Assembly (NCBI GenBank): GCA_004431415.1
Contig: QPMI01000312.1
Span: 1-61,686 of the forward strand
Reading direction: 5' to 3'
Origin: Cyanophora paradoxa CCMP329
Taxonomy: Eukaryota; Plantae; Glaucophyta
Length of the DNA: 61,686 nt
Positions within the stretch are counted from its first letter, which is position 1. The number at the start of each line of letters is the position of its first letter. A program made the position numbers and the translations under genes. The notes beneath the pieces are model-generated. The model searched no databases. It was given only the letters and a program-made list of their open reading frames with translations, and had not been told where the DNA came from. Positions 8,601-11,600 of the stretch are shown one piece after another.

Positions 8601-11600
8601 CGCAGTTTGCGCCGGAGGGCCGGCCGCGGGCGCCCTCGACGGCGGCGCAGCACGTGGCGTGCCGGCGGGCGGCCCTCGCCCTCGCCCTCCAGCCGCGCAT
8701 CAGCGCCGCCCTCCAGGCACCCTCCCCACGCCCCGTCCGCTCGCCCGCCGCCTGCCGAGCTTCCTGCCGGCGCAGGGCCAGGGCCTGCTCTCTGCCTTCG
8801 CCTCGACGGAGATGCCGCTCGTCCCCGTCCTCGCCGCCATGGAGGCCCGCCCGCCCCGCCCCGCGCGCAGCCCCCAGCCGCCCTCCTGACCGGCCGGCCC
8901 CGCCCCGTGCGCACGCAGGCGGCCGGCTTCGGGTTCGACGCCCCCTACCTGAACCGCTTCAAGCGGTGCCGAGCCGCGCCGCGCCCCGCCCCTTCTTGTC
9001 ACCCCCCTCACCTGGGGCAGGCACGCGGAGTTCAAGCTGCGGGTGCTGGAGCGGGAGGCGCACCGCCTCGCCGGCCGCAAGTTCGACCTCCGCTCCCCGC
9101 CGGCCCGCCCGTCCCCCGCACCCCCGCCCCCGCTGCGCCTCCGACGCGCCGCAGGAGCTGGCGGCGGTGCTGTTGGGGGAGCTGCGGGTCGGGGAGATGG
9201 CGGCGGCGCTCGGCGTCGAGCTTCCCCCGCGCCTCGCCGACGCCCTCGCCGAGAAGGCCCGCCGCCCTTGCGGCCCCTTATGCTGGCAGCGGCCGCTGAG
9301 ACGGCCTCGCTCCTTCCCCGCCGCAGGACCGCTGGCTCCCGTCGGGCGGGGGCGTCCTCAAGGCCCTCGCCCGCGTCCACCCCCTCCCCGCCGTCCGCCC
9401 CGTACCCCCCGTCCCTTTCCCCCCCTCCCCCCCTCAACCCCCGGCCCCCAGGTGCTGGCCGAGCACCGCTCCCTCCGCTTCCACTACTCCAAGCGCGCCG
9501 TACCCCCCACCAGCCCGGCCCCCGCCCTCTCCCACTTGACTCGCCCCGCCACGCGCCCGCTGGCGCAGGTACATCGCGCCGCTGCCGCGCTACGCCGAGT
9601 GGTCCGACGGCCCCGCCGGCCCCGTCCGCCCCCGGCCCCACACGAAGCCGCGCCGGAGAAGCGCTGACTTCGAATTCTTCGTCCGCGCAGGAGCGGCGGG
9701 TGCACGCGACGGTGGTGCAGACGCACACCGCCACCGGTCGCCTCGCCCTCAGGTAGGCACCGCCTCCCTCCCCGGCTCCGCTCGAGGGGCTGAGGGGGCG
9801 GCAGCCGGCCGAACCTGCACATGACACCGCGGGAGCCCTTCACGTTCGCCCCCGTCCGCTACTGGACCGCCAAGTCCATCCACGAGGCCCGCCGCAAAGC
9901 GCCCGCCCCGCCCGCCCCACCCGCCCCGCCCTCACTCCGAGCAGGAGCTGGAGGAGGGAGCCGAGTTCGAGGACCTCTCGGAGCGGGGCCCCGACACCCC
10001 CGCCAACGCCGCCTGGTGGCGCGACAACGTCCGCCCCGCCCCGCCCCGCCCGCTCCTCCGCCCGCTTCTTCCTCAACTGCGGGGCAGGACTTCCGGCGGG
10101 TGCGGGTGAACTGCACGAGCCTGCGGCAGCGCGGCGCCATCGTCCGCGGCGTCCTCCTCCAGGCCTGTACCCCCCGCACCTTCGATCTGTCCTCCCTGTC
10201 CGACGGGCGCTCGCGCGCGCACACAGGTGACGGGCGAGAGCGTCGAGGAGGCGCAGATCCGCGCCCGCGCCGGCCCCGGCGAGGGCGGCGAGGGCGAGGG
10301 GGAGGGGTCGGCCGGCAGCAGCGGGGAGGACGAGGGGGAAGAGGGGGAGGGCGAGGGCGGGGCCGCCCCGACGATGAGCCTCGCCGACTACTGGCGCGTG
10401 GAGGGGTACGCCTACACCCCGGCCCGCGCCGCCGCCGTCAAGCAGGCGCGCCCCCCGGCCCTCGAGACCATTCCCCGTACCCCGGTCCGAGGCTGCGCAG
10501 GTCCGGGTACGGGTCCGCGTGGGGGGCGTTCAGCGCGTCCTCAGCTACCCCGCCGACCAAGTGCCCTCTTCGACGCCATACCCCCCGCACCCCTCCCAGC
10601 AGCCTCTCACGCGTACCCCCGTCGACAGGTGTGGCGCGTGCTCTCGAACGCGATGGCCGTGACGGACCCCTCCAAGGCGCGCCACGCGCGCCCCGAATAC
10701 CGTACCCGCTTCGTCTCATTTTTGCTTGCTACGCCTCCCCCAGTTCCGCCCTCGGCCCGGGATCAATGTACCCCTCTCCGCCTCGTCGAGCGCGTCCGAT
10801 CCCCCCGAGGTCCGCCCTTCTCCCTCCGGATCCGCCCCTTCCTCCTGTACCCCCGCCCACGGCCGCCCGCAGGAGGACGACGCGCTGCGGGCGGAGCGGG
10901 CGGCGGAGGCGGAGCGGTGCCGGCGGGTCTACGGCGTGCCGCCCCCGCCCCCGGCGGCGGGGACGGAAGGCGGGGAGGGGCCGGAGGGAACGCCCGGGGA
11001 GCTCTCGGTGCACGTGCGGGACGCGCTGGTGGCCGGCGCCGGCCGCACCCTCCTCTCCGTCGACTACTCCCAGATCGAGGCCCGCCCCGCCCCCTCCCGC
11101 CGCTTCGAGCCCCGCGAGGGAGCCTCGAGCGGGCGCCGGGCGGGCGGGGGCGCGCAGGTGCGGCTGATGGCGCACTTCAGCGGGGACGCGCTGCTCTGCG
11201 CAGCCCTCTCCGACCCGGGCGCCCCCGACGTCTTCCGCCGCGTCGCCGCCGACTTCCTCGACGTCCGTACCCCCCCCCCCCCCCCCCCGCTTCCCGTCGC
11301 CCACTCCGCTGAGGCGGCCCGCCCGCGCAGATGCCCCTCGAGCGCGTCACGGAGCGAGAACGCTCACGCGCCAAGAAGGTCCGCCCAGGAAACCTTGGTC
11401 CACGCCGCGCCGGCGGCTGACGGCGCGGTGCGGGGCGGCAGCTGATCTACGCGATCCTGTACGGGAGCGGCCCCGAGGCGCTCGCCGCCGAGTGCGGCTG
11501 CCCCGTCGCCGAGGCCCGCGCGCCCCGCCCCCCGCCGCGCCCCGCCCCCGCCCCGACGGTCTCCGCAGGCCCGGGCCTTCGCCGCGCGCTTCAAGGAGAA

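What the first reader, a model, noticed from the sequence alone, without database searches (positions are those of the whole stretch)
9821..11004. Pol theta with a roughly 250-aa insertion containing a PAZ-like (Argonaute/Dicer 3'-end-binding) domain at the insert-2 site
Seen: between GRLALSRPNLH and motif A (SVHVRDAL...DYSQIE), eight in-phase exons add about 250 aa. The core (about 10088-10680) reads [25 protein letters not shown]|[11 protein letters not shown]-(acidic loop)[25 protein letters not shown]|[20 protein letters not shown]|VWRV. Known: this is the position of Pol theta insert 2, much shorter in human POLQ and implicated in primer-terminus handling and microhomology end joining. 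The PAZ order of elements is beta strand, V.gv, S(v/l)adY, aromatic, beta strand, yP.e, which this sequence follows. Inference: a PAZ module is grafted next to the polymerase active site and could capture 3' ssDNA or RNA ends, suggesting end-capturing or RNA-linked repair. The catalytic Asp residues in DYSQIE and HDE are intact. The PAZ match is by eye only.
Basis: partly seen in the sequence, partly recalled or inferred. Interest (0 to 1): 0.85.

Follow-up and report, generated by a model that had tools for sequence, protein, structure and literature searches.

The report
PAZ-like domain inside polymerase theta
The DNA-repair polymerase theta of the alga Cyanophora paradoxa carries, right beside its active site, a transcribed 250-residue insertion. 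Its conserved core is also found in dinoflagellates and other protists and is predicted to fold like the PAZ domain, which Argonaute and Dicer use to hold nucleic-acid 3' ends.

Summary
The EukProt gene model of Cyanophora paradoxa (P0003) contains them. They add 250 residues between PNLH and motif A, the insert-2 site of Pol theta.

The insert is not private to Cyanophora. A roughly 115-residue core (PSLHEEL, R.LR.G, SLA.YW...G, V[KR]QV.V, YPADQVWR) sits at the same site in Pol theta of dinoflagellates, the synurophyte Mallomonas and an unidentified picoeukaryote. Plants, green algae, animals and Balamuthia lack it.

No sequence profile detects PAZ, but Pfam's classic PAZ model also misses the true PAZ of TtAgo. 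A template-free AlphaFold model from ten Pol theta sequences only (pLDDT 65.6) was compared with 48,161 PDB chains. Sixteen of the top 17 matches are named Argonaute, Piwi or Dicer entries, aligned where ranges could be checked over their PAZ domains (best CpAgo, Z 8.1-8.2; TtAgo 7.1-7.6; human Ago1 PAZ 6.4).

The PAZ-like fold is supported at moderate confidence. Binding of 3' ends is inference. The scan noted the same feature on another piece of this genome, the second gene copy. I found no publication describing it.

The parts
2836..12657 (+). Pol theta gene (N-terminal helicase plus C-terminal family-A polymerase). Gene model P0003 = EukProt Cyanophora paradoxa tig00001331_g8165.t1.
   Evidence: tblastn of P0003 on the window. 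Pfam finds DEAD, Helicase_C, HTH_61, POLQ_helical and DNA_pol_A. EukProt accession.
9809..9832 (+). PNLHMTPR: the end of the conserved TGRL..PNLQN.P motif. The Arg aligns with the Arg of vertebrate PNIQNVPRDFEI, which I infer is human R2254.
   Evidence: PMC9962433 gives the role of R2254. The numbering equivalence is my inference.
9805..9886 (+). Insert exon 1 ([27 protein letters not shown]). It holds the first strand and the conserved S.HEEL helix of the module.
   Evidence: RNA contigs and joints; translation.
9945..10028 (+). Insert exon 2, a Cyanophora-specific acidic loop predicted with low confidence.
10088..10162 (+). Insert exon 3 ([25 protein letters not shown]), beta strands of the barrel carrying the conserved R.LR.G motif.
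10227..10445 (+). Insert exon 4: a helix, the acidic Gly/Glu loop (10272-10379, net charge -11), then the conserved [10 protein letters not shown] helix (10377-10406; W1489 and G1493 are invariant).
   Evidence: The RNA contigs break at about 10305-10314 in the GAGGGC repeat.
10501..10560 (+). Insert exon 5 ([20 protein letters not shown]): a beta hairpin and the start of the invariant YPADQVWR motif.
10629..10676 (+). Insert exon 6 ([16 protein letters not shown]): the last strand of the module.
10744..10809 (+). Insert exon 7, a Ser/Pro-rich Cyanophora-specific tail.
10873..11079 (+). Insert exon 8: a helical and Pro/Gly-rich tail to 11004, then the palm strand SVHVRDAL and motif A DYSQIE (11062-11079).
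9860..10761 (+). The modelled PAZ-like module (P0003:1372-1548), introns included in this span.
   Evidence: AlphaFold model m668f2870d769; fold searches.

Best explanation
The window encodes the Pol theta (helicase-polymerase) of Cyanophora paradoxa. Pol theta enzymes carry a variable loop called insert 2 in the palm, just after the Arg that in human Pol theta touches the primer's 3'-terminal phosphate and just before catalytic motif A. At that site this enzyme has a transcribed, in-frame 250-residue insertion. Its core of about 115 residues is an autonomous folded domain, and it is conserved at the same site in Pol theta of dinoflagellates, a synurophyte and a picoeukaryote. The core is predicted to adopt the PAZ fold (an SH3/OB-like barrel plus an alpha-beta lobe), closest to the PAZ of DNA-guided prokaryotic Argonautes. 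Cyanophora has added an acidic loop and a low-complexity tail. Inferred mechanism, not shown: the module projects from the palm next to the primer strand and holds a single-stranded 3' end. That end could be the incoming overhang before annealing, or the 3' tip of the opposite overhang once a short microhomology has formed. This would stabilise the minimal synapse of theta-mediated end joining. The end would be released as the duplex is extended, as Argonaute's PAZ releases its guide.
For: Transcription and splicing. Gene model and organism. Site equivalent to insert 2: and PMC9962433. Cross-phylum conservation, with 12 invariant residues including W, G and YPAD..R. With the insert removed, the polymerase tree does not rule out a single origin of the module, so this is not obvious recent transfer. 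Template-free AlphaFold model built from Pol theta sequences only: pLDDT 65.6, pTM 0.55, conserved elements at 65-85. Foldseek: the top five hits are all prokaryotic Argonautes, probability 0.99 and 0.97 for the best two. Exhaustive VIA-align over 48,161 chains: 16 of the top 17 rows are Argonaute, Piwi or Dicer entries, Z 8.1 to 5.0, with 84-105 residues aligned. These cover most of isolated PAZ domains (98 of 120, 105 of 123, 95 of 121). Tudor, KOW and SH3-like barrels appear only from Z 4.8 with 50-75 residues aligned. Second look at Foldseek's matches: the top 29 rows are Argonaute or Dicer-like entries, including CpAgo 8.2, CbAgo 8.0, TtAgo 7.6 and KmAgo 7.5, with 16-22% identity. Control: the true PAZ of TtAgo is also missed by Pfam PF02170.
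Against: No sequence-level support was found. Pfam, NCBIfam and PADLOC at E<=10 give no PAZ hit for any of the 10 members. A profile search of PDB sequences gives only ArgR at E=1. hhalign against the TtAgo PAZ gives probability 1%. Smith-Waterman z-scores are at most 2.3. The model is of moderate confidence: only two of five models exceed pLDDT 60, and the alignment has 10 rows (Neff 2.8). The tool's own notes say Z values of 7-8 are typical best scores even for models with no true relative. Foldseek E-values are only 0.07. The ESM Atlas shape search returned KOW/NusG-like barrels, not PAZ. The module's net charge is about 0, so it is not markedly basic. I could not map pocket residues because no residue-level structural alignment was available. 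No binding data exist.
Confidence: 0.55

Rival explanations
1. The conserved core is a folded SH3/Tudor/KOW-like beta-barrel with an added helical lobe. It resembles PAZ only through this common arrangement and is not related to PAZ. It would act as a protein-protein or duplex-DNA contact, for example in Pol theta multimerisation (a role ascribed to insert 2 in animals) or in processivity, rather than as a 3'-end pocket.
For: Tudor, KOW, SAWADEE and NusG barrels appear at Z 4-4.8 and dominate the ESM Atlas search. There is a weak Pfam SH3-A_UBE2O hit. There is no sequence evidence for PAZ. The module's net charge is near zero. The review says insert 2 regulates multimerisation.
Against: PAZ rows score 0.2 to 3.4 Z units above the first unrelated fold and align 84-105 residues against 50-75. 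These alignments span both the barrel and the alpha-beta lobe of isolated PAZ domains. Sixteen of the top 17 matches among 48,161 chains are named Argonaute, Piwi or Dicer entries. The closest matches share 19-22% identity.
Confidence: 0.27
2. The insert is a lineage-specific, GC-driven, largely disordered expansion of the insert-2 loop with no function of its own.
For: The window is 76-82% GC. The acidic Gly/Glu loop, exon 2 and the Ser/Pro/Gly tail are absent from the other taxa and are predicted with low confidence. A single-sequence model was poor, pLDDT 42.8.
Against: The core is conserved from glaucophyte to dinoflagellate to stramenopile, with an invariant YPAD..R and W/G positions. Its elements are predicted at pLDDT 65-85 when an alignment is used.
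Confidence: 0.05
3. The C-terminal half (helix, helix, beta hairpin) is a winged-helix DNA-binding domain of the ArgR type.
For: The only PDB sequence hit of the module profile is the N-terminal domain of the arginine repressor (1f9n, E=1), aligned over SLADYW...YPADQ.
Against: The E-value is not significant. No winged-helix protein appears in the top 50 of either structural search. The N-terminal strands of the module pack with the hairpin into a barrel in the model.
Confidence: 0.03

Closest known systems
Insert 2 of animal Pol theta (human POLQ, about 58 residues, palm subdomain)
   Same: Same position, between PN(L/I)QN.P(R) and motif A. The Arg that follows the motif is retained in Cyanophora (PRE against PRD). 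In animals insert 2 is needed for extending minimally paired 3' ends, for lesion bypass, and for multimerisation (PMC9962433).
   Different: The animal insert is a short, largely unstructured loop with no detectable sequence similarity to this module. Here the distance from TGR to motif A is 281 residues, against 83-93 in vertebrates, and it contains an autonomous conserved domain.
PAZ domains of DNA-guided prokaryotic Argonautes (CpAgo 9jh7/9jh8, CbAgo 6qzk, TtAgo 3dlb/4n47, KmAgo 8xhv)
   Same: These are the best structural matches of the predicted model: Z 7.5-8.2, rmsd 2.8-3.9 A, 93-96 residues aligned, 16-22% identity, over the PAZ range of each chain. There is a local sequence echo, P.PGG..SLA.YW...G against TtAgo PLPGGLSLLDYHASKG (not significant).
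   Different: No significant sequence or profile similarity. The module is inserted in a polymerase palm instead of lying between the N and MID domains of an Argonaute. There is no PIWI or MID partner.
Eukaryotic Argonaute, Piwi and Dicer PAZ (Pfam PF02170)
   Same: Matched structurally: human Ago1 PAZ 1si2 Z 6.4 (98 of 120 residues), fly Ago2 PAZ 1t2s Z 6.1 (105 of 123), Giardia Dicer Z 6.5, Piwi Z 5.7-6.1, DCL3 and DCL4 Z 4.8-5.3.
   Different: PF02170 does not hit any member at E<=10. Identity is only 7-14%.
Thioredoxin-binding domain of T7 DNA polymerase (from my own knowledge)
   Same: A precedent for a lineage-specific insertion in a family-A polymerase that adds a new nucleic-acid-handling property.
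   Different: It is inserted in the thumb rather than the palm, acts by recruiting a host protein, and has an unrelated fold.

Membership tests
DNA polymerase theta (POLQ/TEBICHI) | N-terminal superfamily-2 helicase with the POLQ-type helical domain | tested here: met
   Pfam finds DEAD (4e-17), Helicase_C, HTH_61 and POLQ_helical (4e-28) on P0001, and the same families are recorded for P0003.
DNA polymerase theta (POLQ/TEBICHI) | C-terminal family-A polymerase with motifs A, B and C and the catalytic Asp residues | tested here: met
   DYSQIE at P0003 1628, RSRAKK..YG at 1679, HDE at 1872. The best relatives are Pol theta/TEBICHI proteins.
Pol theta insert 2 | Insertion between PNLQN.P(R) and motif A in the palm | tested here: met
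   Position shown by alignment with 120 orthologues.
Pol theta insert 2 | Sequence similarity to the animal insert-2 loop | tested here: not met
   The region search with the insert finds only the two Cyanophora copies. None of the animal sequences in the set carries the YPADQVWR-type motif.
PAZ domain | PAZ fold: beta-barrel plus alpha-beta lobe forming a cleft | tested here: met
   Met on a predicted model only (pLDDT 65.6). PAZ domains fill 16 of the top 17 rows among 48,161 chains, Z up to 8.2, covering 80-85% of isolated PAZ domains.
PAZ domain | Match to a PAZ sequence profile (PF02170, PF18309 and others) | tested here: not met
   No PAZ family at E<=10 for any of the 10 members. Control: the TtAgo PAZ also fails PF02170 and hits only its own narrow family PF18309.
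PAZ domain | Conserved aromatic and His residues lining the 3'-end pocket | tested here: inconclusive
   Invariant W1489 and Y1522, and near-invariant Y1488 and W1528, lie in the elements that align with the PAZ helix and last strand. No residue-level structural alignment was available to place them in the pocket.
PAZ domain | Binding of single-stranded 3' ends | not testable with these tools
   Needs biochemistry.

The most novel reading that the evidence does not exclude
A true PAZ domain, homologous to that of Argonaute and Dicer, was recruited long ago into the palm of Pol theta. It is retained in glaucophytes, dinoflagellates, some stramenopiles and a picoeukaryote, where it captures ssDNA (or RNA) 3' ends to seed microhomology-mediated end joining. 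This would be the first PAZ domain in a DNA polymerase, and a structured ancestor or alternative to the enigmatic insert-2 loop of animal Pol theta.
Probability: 0.35. Interest if true: 0.85.

Novelty: new variant of a known kind. Interest (0 to 1): 0.72.

Why it matters
Insert 2 is one of the features that lets Pol theta extend barely paired 3' ends. In animals it is a disordered loop, so how it works is unclear. A folded, conserved domain predicted to be PAZ-like at the same site offers a mechanism that can be tested by structure: a dedicated 3'-end holder beside the active site. It would also extend the range of PAZ from small-RNA pathways into double-strand-break repair. The module could serve as a compact 3'-end-binding part for engineering polymerases. 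Its patchy distribution bears on how Pol theta evolved in early eukaryotes.

Tried and rejected
- **Exon-by-exon searches, by reference.** Pfam gave nothing but a weak DNA_pol_A hit on exon 8.
- **phmmer of exon 4 against 1.84 billion representatives.** It found only the gene itself and P0002, a repeat protein with a similar short motif (E 5e-4), which I did not follow.
- **Joining exons.** All work on the contiguous insert used database proteins P0001 and P0003 returned by the searches.
- **Single-sequence AlphaFold of the 250-residue insert.** pLDDT 42.8, unusable.
- **DUF2169 hit.** 20 bits, below the cut-off, and present in Cyanophora only, so I take it as chance.
- **ArgR winged-helix lead.** E=1, and not supported by structure.
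- **ESM Atlas, by features.** Noise-level scores of 0.83-0.85.
- **ESM Atlas, by shape.** KOW/NusG-like barrels only, TM below 0.42.
- **hhalign and Smith-Waterman against the TtAgo PAZ.** Not significant.
- **Building a diverse prokaryotic-Argonaute PAZ profile from plasmid records.** Only Thermus copies cover the PAZ region, so I abandoned it.
- **PADLOC and NCBIfam.** Nothing.
- **Metagenome scan with YPADQVWR.** Only two loci, both dinoflagellate-type, and no new taxa.
- **Literature.** No paper links PAZ with Pol theta or POLQ.
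Full report
**What is in the sequence**

The region is 76-82% G+C, so long open frames alone carry little weight. 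I therefore tested the exon model with reads.

Runs X1, X2 and X5 come from two studies and are labelled RNA only by guess. Their contigs lack the introns, so they derive from spliced RNA. Run X8 (2012) is colinear with the genome, as DNA should be.

After resolving the alignment ambiguity at each joint, the exons are 9805-9886, 9945-10028, 10088-10162, 10227-10445, 10501-10560, 10629-10676, 10744-10809 and 10873-11079.
- Four of the seven internal introns are GC-AG.
- All seven are phase 0.
- The seven exons from 9945 onwards have lengths divisible by three.

The RNA contigs break at about 10305-10314, in the GAGGGC repeat of exon 4. No single contig spans all eight exons, but the two halves overlap the same exon.

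**How the spliced product was handled**

I searched them one by one, by reference.

The search with exon 4 returned P0001. A region search then returned P0003. Both are EukProt models of Cyanophora paradoxa (EP00741).
- P0003 maps to window 2836-12657 on the + strand.
- It contains exactly the spliced sequence.
- P0001 is a 99-100% identical second copy on another contig, and its model is truncated.

All later work on the contiguous insert used sub-ranges of these database proteins.

**What the gene is**

The protein has the Pol theta architecture:
- helicase region: DEAD, Helicase_C, HTH_61 and POLQ_helical;
- family-A polymerase with motif A DYSQIE, motif B RSRAKK..YG and motif C HDE.

The insert is P0003:1359-1608, 250 residues, between TGRLALSRPNLH and SVHVRDAL.

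| Group | TGR to motif A (residues) |
|---|---|
| Land plants | 56-59 |
| Green algae | 58-76 |
| Balamuthia | 61 |
| Animals and animal-clade sequences | 44-94 |
| Cyanophora | 281 |

These distances come from 120 Pol theta orthologues. The site is that of insert 2, which a review places in the palm (PMC9962433). That review says insert 2 includes R2254, the residue that contacts the primer's 3'-terminal phosphate. Cyanophora keeps an Arg at the aligned position (PRE against vertebrate PRD). The numbering equivalence is my inference.

**The insert is a conserved module**

Word-based searches with the insert found only Cyanophora. Inspecting the orthologues with long gaps at this site showed the same module in:
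- the dinoflagellates Effrenium voratum, Prorocentrum cordatum, Gymnodinium smaydae and a cluster that includes Cladocopium goreaui;
- the synurophyte Mallomonas annulata;
- an unidentified eukaryote from metagenomes whose 6.3-kb gene is called as one open reading frame on a 67% G+C contig.

The shared elements are (R)PS[LV]HEEL, R.LR.G.[IL]..V, SLA.YW...G[WY], V[KR]QV.V, a Gly turn, and SYPADQVWR[LV]. Twelve positions are invariant across the ten sequences.

Cyanophora alone adds three pieces:
- exon 2;
- a 36-residue acidic Gly/Glu loop with net charge -11;
- a tail of about 60 residues.

A tree of the polymerase domain, built with the insert removed, places the module-bearing sequences in two places on an unresolved backbone. 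One origin is not ruled out. The gene looks vertically inherited, with Cyanophora weakly beside the green lineage. The simplest reading is an old module lost in several lineages, but this is not shown.

**Is it PAZ?**

*Sequence tests were negative.*
- Pfam, NCBIfam and PADLOC at E<=10 on all ten members gave no PAZ family.
- A profile search of PDB sequences gave only ArgR at E=1.
- hhalign against the PAZ of Thermus thermophilus Argonaute gave probability 1%. It did align SLADYW..G to SLLDYHASKG.
- Shuffle-tested Smith-Waterman scores were not significant.

*A control limits the weight of these negatives.* The true PAZ of TtAgo is itself missed by the classic Pfam model PF02170 and hits only its own narrow family PF18309.

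*Structure tests were positive.* A template-free AlphaFold model of P0003:1372-1548 was built from the ten Pol theta sequences alone.
- Mean pLDDT is 65.6 and pTM is 0.55.
- The conserved elements score 65-85; the Cyanophora-specific loops score below 50.

Foldseek found nothing at E<=0.001. Even so, its top five hits were all prokaryotic Argonautes, with probability 0.99 and 0.97 for the best two.

An exhaustive alignment that does not depend on Foldseek, over 48,161 representative chains, gave this ranking:

| Match | Z |
|---|---|
| CpAgo | 8.1 |
| TtAgo | 7.1 |
| Asgard HrAgo1 | 7.0 |
| AaAgo | 6.6 |
| Giardia Dicer | 6.5 |
| Human Ago1 PAZ (98 of 120 residues) | 6.4 |
| Fly Ago2 PAZ (up to 105 of 123 residues) | 6.3 and 6.1 |
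| Piwi (two entries) | 5.7-6.1 |
| DCL4 | 5.0 |

Sixteen of the top 17 rows are Argonaute, Piwi or Dicer entries. Where I could check the aligned range, it is the PAZ domain. The seventeenth is a chain of the CDK8 kinase module that I did not identify.

Unrelated Tudor, KOW and SAWADEE barrels start at Z 4.8, with only 50-75 residues aligned. A second look at Foldseek's own list gave 29 Argonaute or Dicer-like rows first, with CpAgo 8.2, CbAgo 8.0, TtAgo 7.6 and KmAgo 7.5 at 16-22% identity.

The tool warns that Z values of 7-8 are common best scores. What counts here is that one domain family fills the top of the list, that nearly whole PAZ domains are covered, and that there is a gap to the first other fold. 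I put the PAZ-like fold at about 0.65, and true homology somewhat lower.

**How it may work (inference)**

Insert 2 emerges from the palm beside the primer strand, a few base pairs upstream of the active site. This rests on family-A and Pol theta structures as summarised.

A PAZ-like cleft there cannot hold the primer end while that end is being extended. It could instead do one of two things:
- park the incoming 3' overhang before annealing;
- grip the 3' tip of the opposite overhang once a 2-6-bp microhomology has formed.

The second would stabilise the minimal synapse that Pol theta must extend. Release on duplex growth would parallel Argonaute's release of the guide 3' end.

The closest structural matches are DNA-guided Argonautes. 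In CpAgo, the best match, a PAZ pocket is reported to accommodate unpaired DNA strands (PMC12271445). Nothing here tells DNA from RNA ends.

Two points weigh against a simple nucleic-acid-binding role. The module's net charge is about zero. The animal insert 2 has also been linked to multimerisation. A protein-contact role is therefore the main rival.

**Novelty**

Full-text searches for PAZ with polymerase theta or POLQ, for PAZ-like with DNA polymerase, and for polymerase theta with dinoflagellate found nothing relevant. The architecture therefore appears to be undescribed. I class it as a new variant of a known enzyme, built with a known fold.

**Limits**

- The model rests on a shallow alignment.
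- No residue-level structural alignment or coordinates were available, so I could not map pocket residues.

Noticed in passing
window 8845-11670: Eight of the 15 RNA-supported introns have GC-AG rather than GT-AG ends. The introns are 52-78 nt long and very C-rich.
   Followed up: partly
window 9945-11079 compared with 8919-9886: The seven exons from 9945 to 11079 are all divisible by three and bounded by phase-0 introns (84, 75, 219, 60, 48, 66, 207 nt). Only 2 of the 8 exons before them are divisible by three (47, 82, 102, 66, about 41, 55, 62, 82 nt). Any insert exon could therefore be skipped without a frameshift. No skipped isoform appeared among the joints shown.
   Followed up: partly
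P0002 (502 aa): This is a secreted-looking protein with a PG_binding_1 domain. It carries about five tandem 33-residue repeats (AEYWRSQGYTFSPARMTAY...) that resemble the module's [21 protein letters not shown] segment (phmmer E 5e-4). It could be chance or a shared short structural motif.
   Followed up: no
P0003 residues about 1790-1865; window about 11900-12400: A Gly/Arg/Pro-rich stretch just before motif C (HDE) in the gene model may be a mis-called intron or a second low-complexity insert at the insert-3 position. I did not check it against the RNA contigs.
   Followed up: no
another contig of the same genome (P0001, tig00021246_g19612.t1): A second, 99-100% identical copy of the gene carries the same insert, and its model is truncated after EDDALR.
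   Followed up: partly
window 11266-11290 and 10029-10051: A poly-C run of about 20 nt lies inside an intron, and there are CCGCCCC repeats where many unrelated contigs of the DNA run end or start. These are low-complexity places that produce spurious joints in the read layout.
   Followed up: no
L002 (ENA ERZ7463296 NODE_392, 36.5 kb): A module-bearing Pol theta (2107 aa) is called as a single open reading frame on a 67% G+C eukaryote-like metagenome contig. It lies next to a choline-transporter-like gene and a 2OG-Fe(II) oxygenase gene. The organism was not identified.
   Followed up: partly
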